DNA of 64,000 bases, the filler included, from Dugesia japonica (Eukaryota), in NCBI GenBank assembly GCA_001938525.1. It is 6 parts of 6 records of this genome, joined end to end, with 100 filler letters (N's around TTAATTAATTAA, not from the genome) between each part and the next. Parts side by side here need not be neighbours in the genome. Positions count along the whole stretch, not along the records: positions 28,948 to 43,299 come from MQRL01647577.1; 5 more parts are not named here. The stretch is one strand, 5' to 3'. Below are positions 28,848 to 43,399 of this stretch, in pieces; position 1 is the first letter of the stretch; every line of letters starts with the position of its first letter. The notes under the pieces are model-generated. The model was not told where the DNA came from and searched no databases. It was given only the letters and a program-made list of their open reading frames with translations. Position numbers and translations under genes: made by a program.

Positions 28848-29340
28848 NNNNNNNNNNNNNNNNNNNNNNNNNNNNNNNNNNNNNNNNNNNNTTAATTAAT
28901 TAANNNNNNNNNNNNNNNNNNNNNNNNNNNNNNNNNNNNNNNNNNNNTATATATATATTTATATAGACAGATAGATAGATAGATATACGATATATTTAAA
29001 CGTATTCAAATTATTAAAAATTCTTTTATCTTTGACACAAATTTTAAAATAATTTACTGAAGATTTAATAACAATTTTATTTTTTTAATACCATCATATA
29101 AATTTATATAGAAAAACGTTAATAATAAAATTGTTTAAAATACATTTTTCTCTTGCTTATTTCTATACAAATATATAGATATACAATTTTTCTAATGTAG
29201 CTCCTAATAATATATTATATCTCTGTTTACTAAACGTCTGGCCACTCCTGATCTATATGACTGATAAAACATTATCGGGTGATTTAAATAAAATTTACAT
29301 CTATTATTGAAAAATAAAATAAATATTTAGATTATATTAT

Positions 29341-29432
29341 TTATAATTACAATTATTGTGAGAATAATTGTTGGACTTAACCATTGATCGTTTTTGAGCT
29401 TTCGTTAAAATAAAGAAAAAGCTTTGATCAAT
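29341..29432 (-). mobile_element. 3' half of the non-coding HHR element
   Basis: Hairpin at 29350-29370 and CGATCAATGGTTAAGTCCAA on the minus strand. Further tail-only copies at ~32958-33010 and ~37538-37605. Confidence 0.75.
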
Positions 29433-30768
29433 TCGAAGTCGGTGAATTCCAATATAGAAAAAACTTCAAATTAAATTTGGTCCGGATTATAGTGCCGTAC
29501 CCTATTATCATATATATTTAATTTTTTACTTGTCATTCAGTAATCTGTTATTTATCAACTAAATGTTTTTTTCAAATGTAAAATAAAACAAAAAACCGAT
29601 TTCGATTTTTGCATTTAGAAGGTTTTCTTGATAAATATGTTTTGCATTAGTTACATTTTTATTCGACTGATTAGTTTTGAAGAGATATTTTAGCGTTTGA
29701 AATTTTTAATTCATTTTATTACTTTTGATTTTTAAAATAAAAAGTTAAATATTGAAATTTTTTTGAAAATCTTAAAGTTTGTTTAAATTTTTCTGTATTT
29801 AATTTTAAAATTATTATGGGTATTTATTAATATTTAAATAAAATAATTTGTTGAAATCTATATTTTAAAATTAATTTATATAAAAGAATAAGTGATTTAA
29901 ATAATTATTAATAGATACTAAAAAAGCCAAAGTGCAATTTGAAAGTTATGAAGTTAAGACAACAATCTTTAAGATACTGAAAAAATTCATTTGTTTTAAT
30001 GAATCAAGTTTTAATAAGGAGTTCTTTTTAATATTTCCTGTTGTAACTATACTGTTAATTTCATCGACGAAGCTTATATTTTAAAAAAATTGTCGACGTT
30101 TTTCTAACATTCATAATTAAAACATTTCCCTTGAACTCATATTTTTTATCTATTATTTCATTTATAAATAAATTTTTTCACTGAAAATTTTATTGGATAT
30201 GATAAGATATAAGTCTGGTTCTTATCATGACATCTAATTTTCAAAGGAAACCAGAATTATTGAAAAAAAATAATTTTAAATGAATAAAAAAAATTTTATA
30301 TTTTAAATATATTAACCACAATATATTCACAAAAATGTAAAAAATCATAGGTCCTTCGGAAAATTATGGTGGATTTCAAAACTAAAATTAAAAAAAATAA
30401 GCACCATTGGAATCTATGCATTTTTGCCAACGTGATAAAAGTTTATTGAGTCCTGTTAATGTACTTAACTTGTTTTTCCTGTAAGGTTTAATTTTATTTA
30501 CTTTCATTTATTTCTAATATTATATTTATTAGATTATTTATTATTATTTATTAAGTAATATATTTATTGTCAAAGAGATTTATTGGCTTTAATCAATTAT
30601 CAAAACGTAACCAAGTGTTTTAAAATTTTTTACTGGTGTCTGTAGCATTGCTGAAGTATCTATGGACTGACGACCACACCTTTGCTGTGATAAGTTTGAG
30701 TCGCCACCACAGCTCCGCAGTAGTAAGTTTCACTGGTAATCACAGTTTGACTGTTTTTATTCTGATTG

Positions 30769-31275
30769 GTGAACCATTCAAAACTCTGTAAACCCAAATT
30801 TTATTTTCATATATCAAATTAGGTATAATTCAAATTGTAATGAGATGATGGAGTTTTAAATAATGATTACATGACCCTATGGTGAACCATTCAAGAGCCT
30901 TTAAAATTTAATCAGGACAAATTAGGTATCATCTAAACAGTAATGTGATAATGAACAGTTTTTGTACATGATAGCATGCCCTTCTAGTAAAACATATCGA
31001 TTTTAAACCATAGAAACCGTATAAACCATTTAAATTTAATTGTAAATAAGTCATATTAGGTATTATTCTAACCGTAATGAGTTGGTGGACGTTTCTAACA
31101 TATTTTCACAACCATGTGATGTCCCATTCAAAACCATCGAAATTTTATAGAATAAATTAAGTATCGATCAAAACTGTATAGAAACAAATAGTAATTGTAT
31201 CATGATTATAAAACTTTCTGGTGAACAATTACCATTCAAAACCCTGTATACCATATCAAAATAGGTATCTTTCAA
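30769..31275. repeat. Degenerate tandem repeat, about five units of ~105-130 bp
   Basis: GGTGAACCATTCAA...ATTAGGTAT...GTAATG recurs near 30769, 30881, 30985, 31118 and 31220. Confidence 0.7.
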
Positions 31276-31884
31276 ACATATCTAGAATGTTTACAATATC
31301 GCATAACTTAAATACAATCATTATTAAAAGAAAATCAGTGCAATTTCAAGTTTGCATTGTTTAATTATGTATCTGAGCTACTACCCGATTGAATTTAATC
31401 ATAAAACATTGAAATTTTATAAACCAAATCACACAATGTTTTCGACAACTATTTTAGCTTACAATTCATGCCATTCCATTACCATCTCCGAATGTACAAT
31501 CTGACGGAATTTATTCATCAAGGACTGTAAACGTCCAACAGAAACTTTCAACTTGGAACTTATCGATTAGCCTACATAGATTTAACTATAATAGGCTTAA
31601 GTATAGTATATGCATCTCTAGCAATCTGAGCTTCTGAATTTTCGCATTCAGTCTCAAAAAGTACGCCGCCGCGACAATCTTAAACTCAACCTTTATGATA
31701 AAATGATGGAGAGCTAATCATGTACAACGTAATAATCAAAACTATTACTCCGCAAATTTTCATTTTACTACTTGACACATATTTGCAAAACAGCCAGGAT
31801 TCTTAGCTCAACAGTTATCCAATTCAATGTAAAATATTATAAGCATAAATTATTATCATAAGAAGATAGTGCATTAATATTATT

Positions 31885-31967
31885 GTTATTATTATNNNNN
31901 NNNNNNNNNNNNNNNNNNNNNNNNNNNNNNNNNNNNNNNNNNNNNNNNNNNNNNNNNNNNNNNNNNN

Positions 31968-32032
<65 letters not shown>
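31885..32032. repeat. (ATT)n microsatellite (also 53352-53418)
   Basis: Direct reading; explains the poly-I and poly-L ORFs. Confidence 0.95.
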
Positions 32033-32033
<1 letters not shown>

Positions 32034-32721
32034 CAAATTCATTATTTAAAGTTTCAAGAAAAGCAAATTATTATTACAAAATTCTGAAGTTTTTACGTAT
32101 TGTTTAGTTTAGTTATTAGTTTTAACACAAAATCATTTTAATTATGACTTTATTTGGACTATTACTAAAATATTTTAAATTATATGTATTATTATTTGTC
32201 TGTTACACCACTAAATGAATAAAATTATTAGTTTCATAAGTATACTTATTACAAAATTATTACAAGTAATTAAAAAATAATAATCAAAATTAACTATCAA
32301 ATTAATTTCCAACAAAATTTATTTAAATGCAAAAAACGTTTCTACTTAGTTTGTGTACCCCATAGGTTCTTTAAAATCGTTACGAACAGTTTAACTAGAA
32401 TCCTTGATGAGTGCATGTTCAAATAATTACAATAGAATGGTTACCTTTGAATAGTTATATTAGAATTATTTCTTTTAAATCAACTTCTTGTGAATAAGTT
32501 CTTTTGAACGGTTATATTTGAATTTTTTCGTTGTGAAAGGAGCTGTTTATCGATAATTATATTGAAATCATTCAAATATGTTATTTTTCTAAAATTTCAA
32601 CGACGTTTTGTTATGTCTTGATTTGTTGCTAAGATCAGTTTTTTAATTTTATATTTTTTATTTTGCAATAAATATTTTGTAATTAATTCAAATAATAATC
32701 TATAATATTAAAGATTTTATA

Positions 32722-32860
32722 TACAGTAAAACCCCTCTATACCGCCCCCATATATATCGCCGACTACCCTACCGCCAAAATATATTTTTAATTTTGGATA
32801 ACATACTTTATTTTGTATGTATTTTTATTTTATATACCGCCAAAGCTATGTTATACCGCC
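32722..32860 (+). mobile_element. Tigger/pogo-like left end
   Basis: TA|CAGTAAAACCCCTCTATACCGCC followed by repeated TATACCGCC. Confidence 0.55.
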
Positions 32861-33729
32861 ATCATTTATTTTTACATAACATACAAAAATAAATTTAATA
32901 CCAATCACTATATTACTCCGTAAAAATTTTTAATTAAATTATAATTTTTAATTAAATCTCAAATGCGATCAATGGTTAAGTCCAACAATTATTCTCACAA
33001 TAATTGTAATTATTAAATTATAATTGATTTACTGATCGCAGATAACTGAAAATTGATATTTTAATTTTTTCAAAGAAAATAACCCAAAATGAACAAGAAT
33101 GGATCAGATGATAATTTAGAAAATTTAAAACGTGTATATTTGATGGTAAAACGAAAAAGAGATTATACGTTATGCTGAATAACATTATTGTATACATAGT
33201 GGAATTTTCTGTGATGTTTAAAATGCGCATCATTCGAAGACAGGTTTGTGATAAATTTCTGTTAAATTGTAAACGAGATTAAATTCGTGAATAATGAAAG
33301 CACGAAAAGCAATTCTGTCCATGTTGACTACTTTGTCCACTGATAACTAGAAAGTAATTTAATTTCCATAATGAAACTTTGCAATTTATAGAAAACATTG
33401 TTGTTAATTAAATTAACATAAAAAATCGATTGAAAAACGATATTCTTTATAGTTATTCCTGAAATTCTGCACTATTAAAAAATTAGCCCATTTCTTTTCA
33501 AATGACCTAACAAAATGTTTTCAAAAATCATCAATTGTAAATTTTTAATTGTACAACCGTATCATGTTTTTAACTTTGGTTTATTATTTTGATGTTAATT
33601 CTCGTGAAAATTCTACGAAAGCTTTTTCAAAAAGAAAACAATTTTAAATTCTAAATCTAATTGAAATTAAATTTTTTAGATTGACAGGTAATTTTAATCA
33701 AAGAATAAATAAAGTTAATAAAGAATTGA

Positions 33730-33862
33730 GTAACAAAGATTTATTGTTTTGAATTAATCAAGAAATCGTCATGTTCCTGAAAAAGACTATTGTCGAAAAT
33801 TTGAACCTTTTTACAAATACATTTTATTTTGATCTTTATTTTGTTCTTTATTTCAATGAAAT
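33730..33862 (+). mobile_element. Copy of the non-coding HHR element
   Basis: GTTC-CTGAAaA-A-GAC(TATT)GTC-GAAA-AT-TT|GAAC at 33774-33806. Upstream GTAACAAAGAT...TCAAGAA is shared with ~59270-59310. Confidence 0.75.
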
Positions 33863-35949
33863 AAAATTTTATTATTGTTTGATGAAAACCAAAGGATTTT
33901 ACAAATATATTTTTCATATGAATGAAGTAGCGATTTGAATGTATTTTGTTAAAAATTAATTAACTAACTAATTTTAAAAAATAAGGTAAAATACATATGG
34001 AAATTGATGAAAATGTATGTAAAAATATGTAATACTTTGAAAATAAAATATGAGTATAAAATAAAATTAAACTGTTAAAAGTTTAATTAGTTTTATCTAC
34101 ATCTATAATTAAAATGTGTGTAACTATGTGTGTGCTTGGTATGTATTATTTGTTCTAACCTTTTTCTATAATATGATCACTTATTAAACTTTAAGTAAGT
34201 TTTTTATGCAAATAAATCTATTTTACTTATATTATAAGCCGCCAATAAGAATACAATACATTACTATAAGGTTAGTATTTTATTGCAATTTGTCAGTTAT
34301 TAAACTTTTAACCAAATTGAAAATAAAAGAATTTAGTTGAAGCAAATAAATGGATTTAATAATTGGAAACATAAATTAAAAAGAAAAAAATTTATAAAAC
34401 TCCTTAAAAATTTGAAAGTGCTTTAAAAAACTCTGGTTGTACATTCATTGGAAAAATGGAAACTAAAATTAGAATTAAATGGAGATGGAAATTTTAAAAG
34501 ATGATGGAAATTTTGGTTTTAATTTCGTTTAAATTATCAAAATAATAACAATTGAGATTTCATTAAATCAATAGCTTCGAGCAAAACATTGATTGGTTTT
34601 TTAGAAATTTCTTTTTGGTAGTTATCCGAATTTCTTACTATTTTCTTCTTTAGAAATTTAGCTTTTTAAGTGATTCAACTCAAAATTTACAAATTTCTTT
34701 CATGTTGTTGAAATTTTATTGGATAATTTATTTTAATATATTTAAGTTTATTTAATTATTATAAATTATACTGATTTTAGGTTTATCCTCTCTGATTAAT
34801 GTTTCTTCCTGTGAAGTGTGGAAATGGAGTCTGTTCCTAATGTTTTCCATGTTATGTGATTGTTGGGACTGAATCACCTAAAATAATCATTGAAAAAGTA
34901 AAAGGGATAAAATCACATGATAATTAGGTTATAATATTCAACAAACCCGAAATAAGAATAAAGAATAAATTGCAAAGAAAATATAAACGAATTATATTAA
35001 ATGAAAATCGATAAGAAATTAAAGATGTTGCAATAAATCAATTTCAATTGTGATCAATACCGATGAATTACGAACAATAAAAACGATAATCAAATTATTA
35101 AACGAATTAATAATTAAATCAATAGATTTTGGCAAAATAAAAACATAATTTGCATTAAATCTAAATAAAATATCAACAATAAGATTCATTTTTTTTACTT
35201 ATTCCAACCAATCAAAACTTCAAATTATTCCAAAAAGGGTATAAATACCCAGGTAAAACTCAAAAAAATTTAAGTGAAAAAACTAAGATCAATCCGAATT
35301 CCATTTATTCAAAAGTCCGGACCCAATCCAAGTGGAAAATGAGAATCTTCGGAACTCATGAGGAAATTTAAATCGATATTACCATCCAGATACCAGCAAC
35401 CCGCCAAATTATTTATTCAAAGTCCGGGTAAAAAAGGTTCCAAGAAACTTATTCAAGTATTTCTCGAAATTCAGCATATCAATCCTCGAGTGAATAATAT
35501 GCGAATAAATAAGTATACGAAACTAATTCTCTTAAAAATCTCGTTGAAAACTTGCGATAATTTTTTTTTCATTTGAGAACCGAATTAATAACAATAATGG
35601 ATGTGATTCAATTTTATCAACCAATAAAAATGTCTATGATCATGAAGTTTATTTTGATTTATTCAGAGTGTGAGTATTGGAGATCAATTCAGAGCTTCTA
35701 TCGCTCTGATAATAAAAATTAACTTAAAGTAAATCGGTGCGCACATGCACTTCTGTAAGGAGTCGTCCACGTTGTCGAGAAATACAGTCCAAGGAAAATC
35801 AGGTAAATCATGGATAGGTGTGGATAATTACTCAAAGTCAACAACAACTTTTAAAAAAATAATCAAAAAATCATAAATTGCTTTGGAACCACAAATGTTT
35901 TGTCCTGCTTTCTGTAATTGAATGGCTGATGGCATTTTCGTTTTGACTT

Positions 35950-37166
35950 AAGTGCGTAAGATATTTGAGAACATATATTTGATGTTACTTTTGTACATTA
36001 TTTTTTAATGCATTACTTATAAAATTGTTTATAATTTATAAAATCAACAAAAAATAATTTTATTGAAATAATATTAACAGGTTAATGGCAGACATTCAAA
36101 TTTATAAAGAAATAAATGGGCATGCTGTAATTGTGGCTTTACAAGCTGATCCTAGTGATTTAGAAATTGCGGGACATTTTCTTCAGATCTTATATTTATA
36201 ATATTCATGAAGTGTTGGAAAAAAATGAAAAAAAAAATAAATAAATAAATAAAAATCATACAAAACACTCTGACATCGTCAGAAAAGCTGATTTAATCCA
36301 AGAAGTTAAATTGGTGACAATCCAAGAATATCCACGAAATCACTTGCTTAAAATATCAAGATCTCGGAAGGAACAATCAGAAATACTGTCCATGAAAACA
36401 TTGGATATAAGTTTTATGTGTTGAGAAAAGAACAATTTCTAAAAAAAAGAAAATCGGTTAATCAGATCTCAAAGGTTCTTAAACAAAATTTAAAAACTAG
36501 CAGAAAAAGATGCAATTTGGTTTTTCTCGGATGACAAAAGCTTTAACAGGATAAATGGTCGTTTTTTATGTAGAGACTCTAGTGAAGTTCCGAGAGTAAT
36601 GCACAATAAATGTCCTGCAACTGTCATAGTTTTAAGGGTAGTCAGCAATGAAGGGCATGTGAACTTTGCTGTCTATATTGAGGTCCTGCAAAATGTTGTT
36701 AAACCGTGGATAGACTCAGTGCGAAATGGAAGATATCATATTTTTCAACAAGTCTCTACACCATCACACAAAGCTAAATCAACACAGAAATGGATTGCTG
36801 AAAGTGTTTCTGACCACATCACTCCTAAATACCCAGAAATTAATCCAATCGATTATTACATATGGAGCGCTATTGAGAAAGAGGTTTATGAGCATTCTTT
36901 TAACACTTTAGATGCTTTGAAGCCCACCATAGTGAACGTGGAGTCGAATATGAATCAGGCCCATTTAATTAAAGCTTGTAAAAGATTTCGATTTCGTGTA
37001 GAAGCAGTTATTACAGCTTATGGTGACTTATTTGAATAAAACAATTAAGCAGTTAATAAATTTTCATCCTTGTAGAATTTTTCATTAATTAAATTATCAT
37101 GTGTCCTTATATATCAGTTTTCCTATAAACATCATACATGTTCTCAAATACCTTACTCAACCTGTA
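35950..37166 (+). mobile_element. Tc1/mariner element, maT (DD37D)-like, decayed transposase
   Basis: TIR-like GTAAGATATTTGAGAACAT (35956) and ATGTTCTCAAATACCTTACTCAACCTG|TA (37138-37166). WFFSDDK, YIEVLQNVVKPWI, IFQQ.STPSHKAKSTQKW, INPIDYYIWS. Confidence 0.85.
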
Positions 37167-37250
37167 TTTTGCATGATTTAGCTACATTTCTCATTTAATA
37201 AAAGGTCATTTAATTATTGTGTTTGTTTTAGTATTTGGATATAATTTTAA

Positions 37251-37400
37251 AAAGTCAATTCCGAACAAAAACTAAGTCAAAAATTCCAAATATTATCAAA
37301 AACAAAAAAATATTTGATAGAAGCTTTTATTTAAATGAAATCTGAAAAACGATGAATGGTTATGTCCAACAATTATTCTCGCAATAATTGTAACTGTAAA
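37251..37400 (+). mobile_element. Copy of the non-coding HHR element (degenerate core, intact hairpin 37370-37390)
   Basis: Colinear with 5140-5294. Confidence 0.8.
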
Positions 37401-40092
37401 ATATAATTTTATATATATATATAATTGGAATGATCCAGGTTAAAAGAATTAGAGATGAGAGATTATTCTCAAATGAAGAAATGAAATTCCTAAATAACGG
37501 CTATCCAAATAAAGTCATATTTAATGAAAATTAATCAAATGAATTCTCAAATGCGATCAATGTTTAAGCACAACAATTATTCTCATAATAATTATAATTG
37601 TAAAATAATAATGGAATTTATGAAAAATCAAAATATTTTGTAAGTCTGGCTTCAGTAAAAATAATTTTTCTCCTAAACCATCTTCGTTGTCAAGTATTCT
37701 TTATGGTAATTTGTTTAGAAAAACCTTGAAAATAAAATACTTGAAAATCACAATCGGAAAAATTAATATTACCTATCTATCTATCTTAACAATTATAAAC
37801 ATAAATAATAATTATTATATTAACATCAAAAAGATTATATAAATGAATGTTACTAAATATTTTTTGAAAAAATTTACAGAAAATTCAAATTAGAAAACAG
37901 AATTTCATCGACACACTATGATTTCCAACCACTGATTTTATAAATATTTTCTTAGTCACATTTGCAATTTCATTTAACAAGAAAATGACTTTTCGGTTGA
38001 CAAATGATGCTCTCATTTTGACAGATGAATCGTAATAATTGCATCACGAAATTTATAGAGAGATTGTAAAGTTAATTAATATTTATGATTTCTTTTATTT
38101 GAAATTAGCCAAAAAAGTCAATCGGGAAACTCGATACAAATATAATTGAAAATAAAGCTGCATATTTTCCATTTATGATTATCATATAATGGTTATTTCC
38201 CCAATATTTTGTAAATTTGTTCAAATTAATAAATCAAAAATACTATTATTTTTGTGATTTCTATTTCACATCAATTAAAATTCATTTCAGCGTAGTATTA
38301 GTTTGTCTGTATGCACTTTTATATTAAATTGATTTTGGGTTGCTATATATCCAGGTATGACTTTAAACACTCGCTCCAAGAGTTTTCTTTTTACTGATGT
38401 CCATGACCATAAGAAAGAACTAATTCTGATTTTATTTGATATTATGCAGATTGATCGACTTTCCAGTACTTTCCGATCAAGTGAATTCCTTGAAAAAATT
38501 AAAAAATAATCTTTATTGAAAATTGTTTCTTTGTTTGAAATAGAAAGGTTATTCACATTACAGTTCAATTGGCAGGTGATAATAGTTTCCTTCCGAAAAA
38601 TTATTTATTTATTGAAGAATTATTGTAATGGTTTCTGATTAAAAAATTTATTTTGTCCAATAAAAAGAAATCGATGGGATATGTGGGGCCCCCAAAATAT
38701 AATAAAATTACGATGGTGTGTAATAGATGAATAATATACCGTGTAAGTGTGCAATTGAATTGAAATAAAATACTAATTACACTGGTGTGCAAATGGAGCA
38801 GAAAAAATTCTAGTTTTGATAAGTAATTGGACATAGATAGATCAATTCAATCGGGTTGCCAAGGGGTTTCTAATCGCGCTCTGTGCTTGTTCCAGATTAA
38901 TATACAGTTAACGCTAGTTTTTATTAGTTTATGTAAATTATGAATTATACTGTAATCGATGAATTTTAGTAACTAATGATAACATAACTTTCATTATATG
39001 AATTATTTTTGCTTAGTAATGAATTTAACTATTGGTTATATTTATAATTAAACAATGATAAGTTAATGGCAATTTGCTAATAATATTGATTAATAGTTAA
39101 CATGGTTAATTAAAATTTTGTAGTAATGAATCATTGTAGTAATGTTTAAATTAGTTTTTCATTAATTGTAATTCATAATGATCTATAATAATGATAATAA
39201 TAACGAGGAAACAATAAAAATACATCTCCTTATTTTTTAAAGTAACCAGTAATAAATAACATCTCGGTAGTAACTTTTGATTTGTTAAAGACGACAATAA
39301 TAAACATAATATTAATAGCGATAATTATAAGAGATAGTACTGATAACAAATGAATGGTTAATGATGGGTAAAAGTGATAATAATTAATGGCCATGACGAT
39401 ACATAATGGGAATAACAATAGGGATAATAAGGCTAATAATGTTAACGTATAAGAAACATAATTGGTATGACTTGATGTCGACATTAGTACGAATCTACAA
39501 TAATAAAAATAATGATAATAATAATAAGGATAGTAAGGAAATATGAAATAAAGGCTAAATTATTCATCCATCTTGCATTCCTCTCGAAGTTTAAAATCAA
39601 CAATAATAGCTGCAACAAGATATTAATATATACATCATACAATACTAGTCACTCTGATCAAAAGGCTTACAAAATTTTATGTCGATCCTAAATGAGTATT
39701 ATTGAAGTGTGAACCAAAAGAATGCAAGCATGCACTCGAATTATGGATTACGAGTCACTGGCTTCATTCTGAAGATCTAAAACGGGACTCTAGATTTAAT
39801 TCTTCACGTGGTTTTACTAAGCCATGACACCCTAGATATAACTTAAATTTTGAACTGTTTAGATGTAACCCCAACAATATCAATTTCTAAATTCTTCCTC
39901 ACATAGACAATACTTTGTATTTCTAGCAAAACATGGGTTTGAATAATTAACTATTGGTTTAAAAGATCGAGTATTTATTAAACATGTTTAGGTTATTTTT
40001 TCATATTTTGTTAGTCTTTTAGTTTATTAAATGGATTAAATAATCCATTTCTCTATTTACTTATAATTTAATTTTTTATTATTCATTAACAC

Positions 40093-40282
40093 AAAAGCTT
40101 CGATCAAAATTTGTTTCTGATAATAATTCTAATTTTCGACTTTGTCTTCGTCAGGAATTGACATTTATCAAAAGTCAATTCCTGGCGAAGACAAAGGTGA
40201 AAATTAGAATTATTATCAAAAATAAAAAAAACAAATTTTTATCGAAGTTTTTATTTTAATGAATTCTGAAAATCGATCAATG
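40093..40282. mobile_element. Fold-back copy of the HHR element
   Basis: Arms ~40093-40162 and ~40174-40250 are inverted; the 3' tail is truncated after GATCAATG. Confidence 0.85.
40125..40159 (-). ncRNA. Ultra-minimal HHR, intact core (35 nt)
   Basis: Minus strand AATTC-CTGACGA-A-GAC(AAA)GTC-GAAA-AT-TA|GAATT with a perfect 5-bp helix I. Confidence 0.8.
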
Positions 40283-42042
40283 ATCAGGATAATTTTTTTA
40301 TTACTTATATTTAGTAATAATCTATTGCTTGCCACTGAAGTCTAATTTTCAGAATATATTTTAATATATTTAGGTTATCGACCAATATCATAATAATCTT
40401 AATAATAATCAATATCATTATTGTGAAAGATACCTCATTGCAGACAATTTTTGGATTGGGTGTTAATTTTATTGTTATTGTGTAAATATTAGTAGGATTA
40501 AAGTAATTTTAAAAAGAAAGACTTTTAAAATAGTGTTTGTCGTGGAACATAGTTCTGGTAAACATGAAATTTGTAAGTCTCTTTTGATTTGTTATTAATT
40601 AGAATTTTTTGAATCGGAAAAAAATTGTAATTACTTTTCATTAATTTTTCTAATTCTTGTAATAGTAAGTGTTAATAAATTTGGTAAATAACTCACGTAG
40701 AACTGTAATTTTTATATCTTGATTACATTGAATTAATCTTTTTATAAAAATTAGTTTTATGAAATTTTCCGTTATCAATTTATATAGTAACAATAAATTT
40801 ATCGATTTTAATTGGTCTTATTTCATTCAAGTTGTATTCATTATTTTTCAAATGAATAACGTAAATGAAAAATATCGACATAAATATAACATCTCTAACA
40901 ATTATAATTATAAAAAATATAATCAATAAAATAGTTTTTCCTTTGATTAAATTTAGTTATTTCAAAGTAATGTTATTTTCTCTATATATATTATTCAAAT
41001 TTTATACATTTTAAATCAGTGACGGAATAAACGATATTTAAAATATTTCCTCCGCCCGGAGGTAGAAAATAAACTTGTGATTTTAAAATAAAATAAATTT
41101 GTAGTAGCATTTTCACTAAATGTTTTATAACATTTAAATTTTTAATGTTTTGTTTGAATATAAGAAACTATTTAAATTTTTGAACCTTAATATGAACAGT
41201 TTAAAAGATGTAATTAGCAAATTATAAGGACCTCTTAGAATACATTATTTTATTTTTAGGAAATAAGAGTTTGCTTGTAAGTCATTTATTGTGTAAGCAT
41301 TGCATTCAAACGTAGAACAAGTAAGAGCCTCTAGATATATTTTTAATTATGTTTGGAAATCTTTAAATAAACGATGCGGTAAATAAAAAAAACAATAAAA
41401 TCAATGAGAATAAGTTTAACTTGAGTAATACGCAATTAAGCTTAATTAATTGCGTTATGTTATTTTCGTGTTTTTATAAAAACCATTAATGTCTCAAATA
41501 CATTAGAAATAATTGATTGTGCTTCGAAAACAAAAATGAGATTTTACGATATGATTAGAAGCTTGGGAGGAAAGAAATAATACAGTTGTCATTTTGGAGG
41601 AAAAAATACACTTGATTTGTTATTTACCTGCTACTAATAAATAATTTTAAGAAAGAAAAATTTTAATATTTCCTAATTTAGCTTTTGTTCAAAATATAAA
41701 TAAGGTTGCACTATTCGTATACCATTAAGATGTTATGATTTTTTTTTGTTGTTTTCATAAATTACATATTGCAATTTTTCATGTTTTTTAAAACTTTATA
41801 TTTAGAGTAATTCTTTTATTTTTTTTAAAATCTAGGTCTGTAACTGAACATGTCTACTCATTGTAGTTCTTTCTATTGTTTTTCTAGTTAATTCAATTAT
41901 CTCAGTAGTTTTGCTTGTTGCTATTCATAATAATTACAGTTAATATTTATTAAAATAAATTCAAATAGATATTTAGAAGTCTTGTAAAATTTGTATAATA
42001 TTATCACTTTTAATAACTTTTTAAATAAAATTTTTTTCTTAC

Positions 42043-42358
42043 CTGATAATACATCGCAAATTTCCCATAAACCTCCGTGCATATTCATTAAACACCAAAT
42101 CTTATCTGAATTGTTGACATGAGCAACTTTAATACCATTTACTTGATTTGCGTCATCCAATAGGTGCTCCAAAACTATAAATTTTGTTTTGTTAGAAACA
42201 AAAAGTGAAATATTGAAAATTGTTTTCTCCCAATTTGGAAGAATAATAACTACTGAGTAAAATGCAGTAGCTAAAATAGGCAATAACCAACTGATAACAA
42301 ATAAAAAGACCGTATTTCGAGAATGATTAGGAAAACAAATTTCCAAATTAATACTCAT
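42043..42358 (-). CDS. First coding exon of a claudin/PMP22-superfamily membrane protein
   Basis: ATG at 42358; hydrophobic segment FLFVISWLLPILATAFYSVVIIL, then PNW, then HGGLWEIC (W...GLWxxC signature); donor AG|GTAAG at 42043/42042, phase 1. No lesions. Later exons not identified. Confidence 0.75.
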
Positions 42359-43399
42359 TTTTAAAAGAATAATTGCGTAATTACTAGAAAAACCATTGAT
42401 CGATATTTTTGCTTTGAAATTGATTTGTATTATGACAAATTATAATACAAACAATGGAATAAATTTCATTGGATATGTAAGTAACCAATGAAAATCTAGT
42501 AAAGGGATTGAAACAAGTGTAAAGGAAAGTTTAGTATCAATATTAATTATACAATGACAAGAAATTCATTTGCTTCAACAGATTAATATAGATATGAATA
42601 GTAATTCTATCTCATTAACGCCCTAATTATTTCAAAGTTTTCTCTTTTACTTTCAAAAGCTACTTTAGTAATTTTAGTGATTTCAAAATTCTACCGCCGA
42701 TCATGCATAAATAATATATTCATTAAGTCAAAATATGATATTTAAAGTGTTTAGAGTAAGAGATTTAAATATAACTCTTTGAGACACCACAGTGTTAAAA
42801 GTGAACCACCTTTCTGATGCGTAAAAAGGCAAAAAACCTAATTGAATTATTATTTTTTATATTTTAAGCCATGCCTCAAAGGATTAAAAATATAAACATG
42901 AATTAATTTTTTTTTCTAATATTGTCATTCGGGAATACAAATTTGAAATCCAAAAACCGACCATTGTTTAACCGATTTATCCATTTTAATAGTTTTTCTA
43001 ACTAATTTTTTTAGTAAATTTTAAATGCTTGTGTAATATTTTTTCAATGTCTGGCAGTTTTTATTTAAAATGGGTTAAATTAAAATGTTAAAATCCAAAT
43101 ATGAAAATACAAAAATATATTAAAATGCATTTTCCTAAAAATTACATTCTCGATTTCCTGGTTTTGAAGTTCAATTTTAATTTTCTCTTCTTTTTAAATT
43201 TCACAAACTTGTAGAAGGCAGATTTAATTAAGTTGTTAAGCTTGACTGAACTAGAGTCAGCGACGGATCTTGGAACTATTCATATGAAGGGCGATACTAN
43301 NNNNNNNNNNNNNNNNNNNNNNNNNNNNNNNNNNNNNNNNNNNTTAATTAATTAANNNNNNNNNNNNNNNNNNNNNNNNNNNNNNNNNNNNNNNNNNNN

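What the first reader, a model, noticed from the sequence alone, without database searches (positions are those of the whole stretch)
40125..40159. 35-nt hammerhead whose helix III is only a 4-nt palindrome: predicted obligate dimer
Seen: between GAA and the cleavage base the copies have only AATT (40125-, 33778, 43402, 58520) or ATAT (5110-, 5148, 7540-, 7677); the PLE-linked family has ATTGAT or ATATAT. Helix I covaries (AATTC/GAATT, GTTC/GAAC, TTGC/GCAA, TTGT/ACAA) and all have one extra base after CUGANGA. A two-base loop cannot close helix III in cis, but a self-complementary 4-mer can pair between two ribozymes. Established: PLE-associated minimal HHRs cleave as dimers. The switch between two different palindromes is sequence-level support, and these cores are extremely short.
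Basis: partly seen in the sequence, partly recalled or inferred. Interest (0 to 1): 0.75.

Follow-up and report, generated by a model that had tools for sequence, protein, structure and literature searches.

The report
Known-type minimal hammerhead in abundant repeat
The 35-base motif is a real minimal hammerhead ribozyme of the kind already described for Penelope-like retroelements, sitting at the 5' end of a very abundant short repeat, and this copy is most likely an inert relic locked in a long hairpin.

Summary
On the minus strand, 40159..40125 reads helix I (AATTC), CTGACGA, one extra A, a 3-bp helix II (GAC-AAA-GTC), GAA, AATT, A17, then helix I (GAATT). A strict descriptor gave 0 chance hits in 36 Mb of simulated sequence.

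Reads from the same organism show a hugely repeated family. The two middle bases of AATT change at near-equal frequency, about 40% each, which fits a switch to ATAT.

The architecture is not new. A helix III with no loop, a palindromic 15.2-16.2 pair, an extra base after A9, a G10.1-C11.1 pair and a 4-5 bp helix I together define the published "min-HHR" of Penelope-like elements (Cervera & de la Pena 2014), which was already proposed to act as a dimer. Only the very short helix II is unusual.

The motif lies at the 5' end of a ~190-nt SINE-like repeat with eight copies in 14 kb. At this locus two copies sit head to head. The partner arm has a dead core, the pair folds into a hairpin of about -90 kcal/mol, no same-strand partner exists in the piece, and no RNA reads come from the locus or end at the cleavage site.

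Verdict: a real new member of a known kind, of low to moderate interest.

The parts
40125..40159 (-). Intact minimal type-I hammerhead. Helix I is 40155-40159 paired with 40125-40129. Core CUGACGA is 40148-40154, with an extra A at 40147. Helix II GAC/GUC with loop AAA is 40138-40146. GAA is 40135-40137. The helix III palindrome AAUU is 40131-40134. A17 is 40130, and the predicted cut is between 40130 and 40129.
   Evidence: Sequence; descriptor scan; family variation.
40177..40211 (+). Mirror copy of the hammerhead in the other arm, with a dead core: CTGGCGA (A6 to G at 40185) and a helix II mismatch (GAC/GGT, 40197).
   Evidence: In one search, 84% of the family depth has A at 40185 and 98% has T at 40197, so these are private mutations of this copy.
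40071..40166 (-). Left arm: one repeat unit running from its 5' end (AAATGTC plus the hammerhead) outward, about 96 nt, lacking the 3' part of the unit.
   Evidence: Inverted repeats I4 and I5. Repeat depth spans 40072-40288 while the flanks are at single-copy depth. BLAST and alignment.
40170..40291 (+). Right arm: a second repeat unit, head to head with the left arm across a 3-nt spacer (40167-40169), about 122 nt.
40047..40070 (+). Candidate target-site duplication, left copy. Its partner is 40292-40313.
   Evidence: Local alignment score 12; 3.8% of random window pairs of the same geometry score as high. Both copies abut the repeat-depth boundaries. Borderline evidence.
40292..40313 (+). 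Candidate target-site duplication, right copy.
33773..33806 (+). Second structurally intact copy from a different subfamily: helix I GUUC/GAAC, helix II GAC-UAUU-GUC, AAUU, U17. The core carries G8 to A (CUGAAAA), so it is predicted to be inactive.
   Evidence: The downstream body matches the family. RNA loose-end consensus at 40110 matches this subfamily.
37257..37291 (+). Decayed hammerhead at the 5' end of a full-length repeat unit (core CGAACAA, GAA changed to AAA).
   Evidence: Repeat family D5.
34623..34659 (-). Decayed hammerhead of another diverged repeat copy.
37246..37440 (+). Most complete repeat unit in the piece, about 190 nt: 5' hammerhead region, A-rich stretch, conserved body, 3' stem-loop.
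37369..37391 (+). Conserved 9-bp stem (ACAATTATT / AATAATTGT) with a 5-nt C-rich loop near the 3' end of the unit, 83-105 nt downstream of the hammerhead cut position. It may be the counterpart of the AC-rich stem-loop where a PLE reverse transcriptase initiates.
   Evidence: Present in 4 copies in alignment A2. The spacing is compared with the PAc element in PMC11167929. The functional reading is inference only.
37484..37621 (+). 5'-truncated repeat copy with no hammerhead, lying directly downstream of the 37246 unit.
   Evidence: (D1).
32922..33025 (+). 5'-truncated repeat copy (3' body and stem-loop only).
29313..29431 (-). 5'-truncated repeat copy (3' body and stem-loop only).
   Evidence: (I1-I3).

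Best explanation
The motif is a genuine member of the minimal type-I hammerheads (min-HHR) described for Penelope-like retroelements and found dispersed by the thousands in animal genomes. Here it forms the 5' end of a ~190-nt non-coding, SINE-like repeat. That repeat is extremely abundant in this AT-rich genome, and several of its subfamilies are transcribed.

In source copies, the ribozyme would act on multimeric or read-through element RNA. Two units would pair through the 4-nt palindrome to make a 4-bp helix III, and helix I would also be swapped between the two units. That gives 14 inter-unit base pairs in total. Each core would then cut after H17, probably with help from a protein such as the retroelement's own RT/EN protein. 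This step is inferred from the literature and is not shown here.

The copy at 40125-40159 looks like a passive insertion relic. It is one arm of a head-to-head pair of two units that may carry a target-site duplication. The partner arm has lost its core. Any transcript across the pair would fold into a ~90-bp hairpin that hides the ribozyme. The locus gave no RNA reads in the three runs examined.
For: All conserved hammerhead positions are present, together with the four hallmarks that Cervera & de la Pena did not put in their descriptor: an extra nucleotide after A9, G10.1-C11.1, palindromic 15.2-16.2, and covarying short helices.

Chance is excluded: 0 hits in 36 Mb simulated and 0.0 to 0.003 expected per piece.

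Family scale: 10,704 contig pieces of a DNA run match at 90% or better. Summed depth is 692,242 over 40134-40164 against about 9.5 in the unique flanks. AAUU changes to AUAU at about 40% of depth, and H17 varies A/C. The element's 5' boundary falls at 40161-40166, where flanks have no consensus.

Subfamilies share the body but differ in helix I and in helix II loop.

Head-to-head arms are 57 nt and 89% complementary. The hairpin is -90.7 kcal/mol against -2.0 for the monomer fold.

RNA reads are nearly all 90-95% alike and only partly on the stretch, so they come from other copies. The unique flanks have zero RNA depth.

From the literature: dispersed single min-HHRs and close opposite-strand pairs have been reported; a PLE protein nicks and extends both DNA strands; and the PAc hammerhead cleaves only with protein present.
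Against: No autonomous PLE (RT or GIY-YIG ORF) lies in the 14-kb piece; only a mariner DDE_3 relic was found, so the PLE link is by motif class alone. ORFs under 70 aa were not scanned.

Helix II is only 3 bp, against 7-8 bp in the published Schistosoma families.

Nearest-neighbour energy does not favour the dimer (+0.6 kcal/mol).

No read starts or ends pile up at the predicted cut, and more than 100 RNA reads run across it.

Only 1 of 5 hammerhead-bearing copies in the piece has an intact core and helices. In-piece covariation is not significant. Linkage of the two palindrome changes is inferred from marginal frequencies, not read directly.
Confidence: 0.78

Rival explanations
1. A chance hammerhead look-alike fixed in one ancestral AT-rich repeat and multiplied passively. 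It has never been a ribozyme.
For: Helix II is only 3 bp and helix III is absent. The folding energies are near zero. No Rfam hammerhead model matches even at E up to 10. No RNA ends fall at the cut site. In-piece covariation is not significant. Most copies in the piece are decayed.
Against: There were 0 descriptor hits in 36 Mb of simulated sequence. The motif keeps its shape across subfamilies that differ in helix I, helix II loop, H17 and palindrome sequence. It shows four independent hallmarks of the published min-HHR class.
Confidence: 0.08
2. The functional unit is the ~200-bp palindrome itself: a foldback or MITE-type DNA element, or a hairpin precursor of small RNAs. The hammerhead resemblance would be incidental.
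For: The arms are 57-61 nt and 75-89% complementary. The hairpin is -90 to -96 kcal/mol on either strand. There are sub-threshold matches to miRNA precursor models (mir-4798, 43 bits, E 2.5e-6). A possible target-site duplication flanks the pair.
Against: Most genomic copies end at 40161-40166 with unrelated flanks, so they are single arms rather than palindromes. The other copies in the piece are single units or 5'-truncated ones. The miRNA matches lie far below gathering scores (43 against 75) and are expected for any long hairpin. No RNA reads come from this locus.
Confidence: 0.06
3. An active hammerhead that does not need a second ribozyme. A protein cofactor or a distant cis sequence would supply the helix III partner, so the palindrome would not be the dimer interface.
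For: The PAc PLE hammerhead cleaved only when its protein was added. The 4-bp A/U helix is very weak. Most genomic copies are isolated.
Against: Self-complementarity of the 4-mer appears to be kept while its sequence changes (AAUU, AUAU, and AUGU with wobble). That is what a homodimer interface predicts, and it is not needed for a protein clamp.
Confidence: 0.08

Closest known systems
Minimal type-I hammerheads (min-HHR) of Penelope-like elements and dispersed metazoan copies (Cervera & de la Pena 2014, PMC4209133; Lunse, Weinberg & Breaker 2017, known to me only through citations, as the paper was not held)
   Same: Open helix I of 4-5 bp. CUGANGA followed by one unpaired nucleotide before helix II. 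G10.1-C11.1. GAA. Helix III reduced to A15.1-N-N'-U16.1 with a palindromic middle and no loop 3. Thousands of heterogeneous copies per genome, mostly dispersed single motifs. Opposite-strand pairs occur. Action as dimers is proposed.
   Different: Helix II here is 3 bp with a 3-4 nt loop, against 7-8 bp in the Schistosoma families, giving a 34-35 nt motif. No PLE ORF or pLTR context is visible in the piece. The motif sits at the extreme 5' end of a ~190-nt non-coding unit.
Metazoan non-LTR retrozymes (de la Pena et al. 2020, PMC7229834; 2026 preprint 10.64898/2026.07.22.740005, which links them to PLE pLTRs)
   Same: Short (170-400 nt), AT-rich, non-coding, hammerhead-bearing, transcribed repeats thought to be mobilised by PLEs.
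   Different: Retrozymes carry canonical type-I hammerheads with loop 1-loop 2 contacts and occur as tandem arrays that give circular RNAs. Here the hammerhead is minimal, copies are dispersed or head to head, and no back-joined reads were reported.
Schistosome Sm-alpha / Sj-alpha SINE-like retroposons with a hammerhead (as summarised in PMC6765202)
   Same: SINE-like, high-copy, non-autonomous elements that carry a type-I hammerhead with a weak helix III.
   Different: Those carry a canonical hammerhead downstream of a pol III promoter. No promoter boxes were tested here, and the motif is the minimal form.
Double hammerheads of newt satellite 2 and avocado sunblotch viroid (Forster et al. 1988, cited)
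   Same: A helix III too weak for monomer cleavage, with two copies pairing to build an extended helix III.
   Different: Those keep a short stem and a loop 3. Here the whole of helix III is the 4-nt palindrome, and helix I must also swap between the two units.

Membership tests
PLE-type minimal hammerhead (min-HHR) | Catalytic core C3 U4 G5 A6 N7 G8 A9 and G12 A13 A14 | tested here: met
   CTGACGA at 40154-40148 and GAA at 40137-40135 on the minus strand. The copy at 33773 fails at G8.
PLE-type minimal hammerhead (min-HHR) | A15.1 and U16.1 followed by H17 (not G) | tested here: met
   A at 40134, U at 40131, A17 at 40130. Listed family variants at H17 are C, and in the mirror arm C (6%) with a trace of G (1%).
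PLE-type minimal hammerhead (min-HHR) | No loop 3; positions 15.2-16.2 self-complementary (palindromic helix III) | tested here: met
   AAUU in all five copies in the piece. AUAU at about 40% of family depth through paired changes at 40133 and 40132.
PLE-type minimal hammerhead (min-HHR) | One unpaired nucleotide between A9 and 10.1 | tested here: met
   A at 40147 and A at 33784.
PLE-type minimal hammerhead (min-HHR) | G10.1-C11.1 closing pair of helix II | tested here: met
   GAC...GUC in both structurally intact copies.
PLE-type minimal hammerhead (min-HHR) | Short open helix I (4-5 bp) with compensatory variation between families | tested here: met
   AAUUC/GAAUU against GUUC/GAAC. RNA loose-end consensus gives GAAAC for the second subfamily. 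Statistically weak within the piece.
PLE-type minimal hammerhead (min-HHR) | Long helix II (7-8 bp), typical of the Schistosoma families but not required by the descriptor | tested here: not met
   Helix II is 3 bp.
PLE-type minimal hammerhead (min-HHR) | Location in the pseudo-LTR of an element that encodes RT and GIY-YIG endonuclease | tested here: inconclusive
   No such ORF of 70 aa or more in the 14-kb piece; only a DDE_3 relic. The published class is mostly dispersed single motifs. The rest of the genome was not available.
PLE-type minimal hammerhead (min-HHR) | Self-cleavage after H17 as a dimer | not testable with these tools
   No read ends at 40130|40129 in three RNA runs. Standard RNA-seq is a poor test, and the PAc study also saw none.
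Canonical type-I hammerhead (Rfam Hammerhead_1 and relatives) | Match to a curated hammerhead covariance model (closed helix III, loop-loop contacts) | tested here: not met
   No hammerhead family among matches at E up to 10 over 28948-43299.
Metazoan non-LTR retrozyme | Head-to-tail tandem arrays of 170-400-nt units, each with a canonical type-I hammerhead | tested here: not met
   Copies are dispersed, head to head or 5'-truncated. One loose tandem (37246 and 37484) lacks a second hammerhead.

The most novel reading that the evidence does not exclude
This 34-35-nt family, with a 3-bp helix II and a 4-nt palindromic helix III, would be among the smallest natural hammerheads that still cleave, working as a domain-swapped dimer. 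Its ~190-nt host would be a Penelope-dependent SINE. The head-to-head pairs flanked by a target-site duplication would record reverse transcription primed from both strands of one staggered break, matching the two-strand nicking and internal initiation seen in vitro for the PAc element.
Probability: 0.15. Interest if true: 0.55.

Novelty: new member of a known kind. Interest (0 to 1): 0.27.

Why it matters
Minimal hammerheads are very common in animal genomes, yet their activity and role in living cells are still called a mystery (PMC7761336). A family this short and this abundant, with natural AAUU and AUAU versions and several helix I versions, would be a convenient natural test set for three questions. 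Does the palindrome act as a dimer interface? Do the subfamilies fail to cross-activate? Is a retroelement protein needed? The head-to-head insertion may also carry information on how such elements integrate. The finding does not add a new kind of ribozyme or a new principle.

Tried and rejected
- Rfam, all families, E up to 10: no hammerhead model matches. The only hits are generic hairpin matches to miRNA and leader models, far below gathering scores, explained by the palindrome.
- Pattern scans of public metagenome and viral contigs for this family's core with helix III left free: two metagenome hits. Both have G at position 17 and no helix I pairing, so they are chance matches. No outside relatives were obtained.
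- Lunse et al. 2017: not held, so its variants could not be compared base by base.
- Pfam on the seven ORFs of 70 aa or more without N: only a weak DDE_3 (mariner) relic, and no reverse transcriptase or GIY-YIG. ORFs under 70 aa were not scanned.
- Covariation count on the five copies in the piece: one compensatory pair, not above the shuffles. There are too few sequences.
- RNA read ends at the predicted cut: none. More than 100 reads from other copies cross the site. This says nothing firm about low-level cleavage.
- Thermodynamic support for the dimer: the nearest-neighbour model does not favour it (+0.6 kcal/mol), and the minimum-energy dimer is a different, extended pairing. The model ignores the tertiary core, so this is uninformative rather than contrary.
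- Organism identity: run names are coded, and I did not pursue it.

Full report
**What is at the coordinates**

The minus strand from 40159 down to 40125 reads as follows:

| Part | Sequence | Coordinates |
|---|---|---|
| Helix I, 5' strand | AATTC | 40159-40155 |
| Core C3-A9 | CTGACGA | 40154-40148 |
| Unpaired base | A | 40147 |
| Helix II | GAC-AAA-GTC | 40146-40138 |
| G12-A14 | GAA | 40137-40135 |
| Helix III | AATT | 40134-40131 |
| H17 | A | 40130 |
| Helix I, 3' strand | GAATT | 40129-40125 |

Every conserved hammerhead position is present. Helix III is only the four bases A15.1 A15.2 U16.2 U16.1. The predicted cut lies between 40130 and 40129.

It reads GTTC, CTGAAAA, A, GAC-TATT-GTC, GAA, AATT, T, GAAC. 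Its shape is kept, with a different helix I and a different helix II loop. That copy should be inactive.

**Is it more than chance?**

I wrote a descriptor requiring the core, 0-1 extra base, helix II of at least 3 bp, GAA, A-N-N'-U, H17 not G, and helix I of at least 4 bp.
- It finds exactly these two sites in the 14.3-kb piece: one with an exact core and one with a single core mismatch.
- First-order Markov copies of the piece gave 0.0 and 0.003 per piece.
- 36 Mb of simulated double-stranded sequence gave no hit.

Covariation inside the piece is thin. Five copies yield one compensatory pair, which is not above the shuffles. The case therefore rests on the descriptor statistics and on the genome-wide read data below.

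**The motif belongs to a very abundant repeat**

BLAST and alignment within the piece give eight copies of a ~190-nt unit.
- The unit starts with (AAAA)GTC plus the hammerhead.
- An A-rich stretch and a conserved body follow.
- It ends with a 9-bp stem (ACAATTATT / AATAATTGT) closed by a 5-nt C-rich loop.

The most complete copy is 37246-37440, whose hammerhead is decayed. Three copies are 5'-truncated and keep only the 3' part: 37484-37621, 32922-33025 and 29431-29313. One further copy (34675-34531) is heavily decayed.

I laid reads of the same organism on 39700-40600.
- Segment 40072-40288 is matched by 10,704 contig pieces of a DNA run at 90% identity or more.
- Summed depth reaches 692,242 over 40134-40164, against about 9.5 in the unique flanks. 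The tool warns that this is not a copy number, but the family is clearly huge.
- Copies end at 40161-40166 with flanks that have no consensus. This places the 5' boundary of the element 2-7 nt upstream of helix I.

**Genome-wide behaviour of the palindrome**

- 40133 T>A accounts for 141,060 of 350,137 depth (88 contigs).
- 40132 A>T accounts for 140,681 of 339,993 depth (83 contigs).
- No other letter is listed at these two positions.

On the ribozyme strand this reads as AAUU changing to AUAU. The two counts are marginal totals, so linkage is inferred. It is backed by loose-end consensus sequences that read GAA-ATAT-C-GAATT... in a DNA run and an RNA run. Two other RNA runs show a variant GAA-ATGT-C-GAATC, which is still self-complementary if G-U wobble pairs are allowed.

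H17 varies between A and C. No variant reaching the listing threshold appears in CUGACGA. The 90% identity filter biases that last point.

An RNA loose-end consensus at 40110 matches the sequence downstream of the 33773 copy. The two copies therefore belong to one superfamily, with the same body and a different helix I.

**The local context**

The intact motif is one arm of a head-to-head pair.
- Arms 40110-40166 and 40170-40226 are 89% complementary with 3 nt between them. Weaker complementarity extends to 40073 and 40272.
- The plus-strand arm carries the same motif at 40177-40211 with two private defects: CTGGCGA (A6 to G at 40185) and GAC/GGT in helix II (40197).
- In the family at large, 84% of depth has A at 40185 and 98% has T at 40197.

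A transcript of either strand across the pair folds into a hairpin of -90.7 or -96.0 kcal/mol. The monomer fold of helices I and II is only -2.0 kcal/mol. The hairpin also explains the sub-threshold miRNA-model matches in Rfam.

No intact hammerhead lies on the same strand anywhere in the piece.

RNA reads in three runs are almost all 90-95% alike and only partly on the stretch, so they come from other copies. The unique flanks have zero RNA depth. No read starts or ends pile up anywhere, and more than 100 reads cross the predicted cut.

Directly outside the repeat boundaries lie similar direct sequences, 40047-40070 and 40292-40313. They are a candidate target-site duplication of borderline significance: 3.8% of random window pairs of the same geometry score as high.

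**How it most likely works**

In a dimer of type-I motifs lacking loop 3, the strand topology forces three inter-unit helices:
- A15.1-A15.2 of one unit pairs with U16.2-U16.1 of the other, giving a 4-bp helix III.
- The 3' strand of helix I of each unit pairs with the 5' strand of helix I of the other.
- In total, 5 + 4 + 5 base pairs form between the two units, and each core cuts the other unit's H17 bond.

This follows from the hammerhead three-way junction and is inference. It predicts that subfamilies differing in the palindrome or in helix I cannot activate each other.

The nearest-neighbour energy of this dimer is +0.6 kcal/mol. Tertiary contacts, a tandem context or a protein would therefore be needed.

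Two published results fit that need. Min-HHRs cleaved poorly even as dimers or trimers. The hammerhead of the lizard PLE PAc cleaved only when its protein was added.

For the copy in question I conclude it is a relic with no activity of its own.

**Comparison with what is known**

Cervera & de la Pena 2014 defined the min-HHR on the reasoning that no helix III or loop 3 is needed if two copies pair. They found thousands per animal genome, mostly as dispersed single motifs and sometimes as close pairs on opposite strands.

They listed four emergent hallmarks:
- covariation within families;
- a G10.1-C11.1 pair;
- palindromic 15.2-16.2.

All four are met here. A 2020 review states that these motifs usually lack any non-conserved nucleotide of helix III, and that their role in vivo is still a mystery.

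What does differ is the 3-bp helix II, against 7-8 bp in the Schistosoma families, and the host: a ~190-nt non-coding unit with the ribozyme at its very 5' end.

No PLE ORF lies in the piece; only a mariner-type DDE_3 relic sits at 36599-37036.

Two parallels with the PAc element are suggestive but unproven.
- In PAc, reverse transcription starts in an AC-rich stem-loop 85-92 nt downstream of the hammerhead cut. Here a conserved stem-loop lies 83-105 nt downstream.
- The PAc protein nicks and extends both DNA strands. That could produce a head-to-head pair whose 5' ends meet in the middle, as seen here.

**Verdict**

The dimer interpretation is reasonable, but it is already published for this class and remains untested for this family. 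This copy is most likely inert. I class it as a new member of a known kind, of low to moderate interest.

Noticed in passing
window 36599-37036 (+): A 146-aa ORF with a weak match to the C-terminal half of DDE_3 (Tc1/mariner-type transposase; E 3.8e-4, below the Pfam cut-off). Probably a decayed mariner-like element.
   Followed up: partly
window 40047-40070 and 40292-40313: Similar direct sequences immediately outside the head-to-head repeat pair. They could be a ~22-nt target-site duplication made by a single insertion event. Significance is borderline in this AT-rich DNA.
   Followed up: partly
window 37369-37391, 32987-33016, 37575-37604 and 29340-29369 (-): A conserved 9-bp stem with a CTCAC-type loop near the 3' end of the repeat unit. 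It lies at about the same distance from the hammerhead cut as the reverse-transcription start stem-loop of the PAc Penelope-like element.
   Followed up: partly
window 37350-37368 and equivalent places in other copies: The repeat body contains CGATCAATGGTTAAGTCC, which loosely resembles a pol III B box (GGTTCGANNCC). This comes from my own recollection of the consensus and was not tested.
   Followed up: no
window 30767-31142: Three to four diverged direct repeats spaced 103-237 nt apart (families D4 and D8), unrelated to the hammerhead repeat. Their nature is unknown.
   Followed up: no
window 31968-32046 next to the N run 31896-31967: A long (ATT)n microsatellite borders the assembly gap. 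A GATA-type microsatellite lies at the start of the piece (28948-28985).
   Followed up: no
window 39731-39792: A second, unrelated repeated segment: DNA contig depth rises to about 1,000-1,260 against a single-copy level of about 9.5.
   Followed up: no
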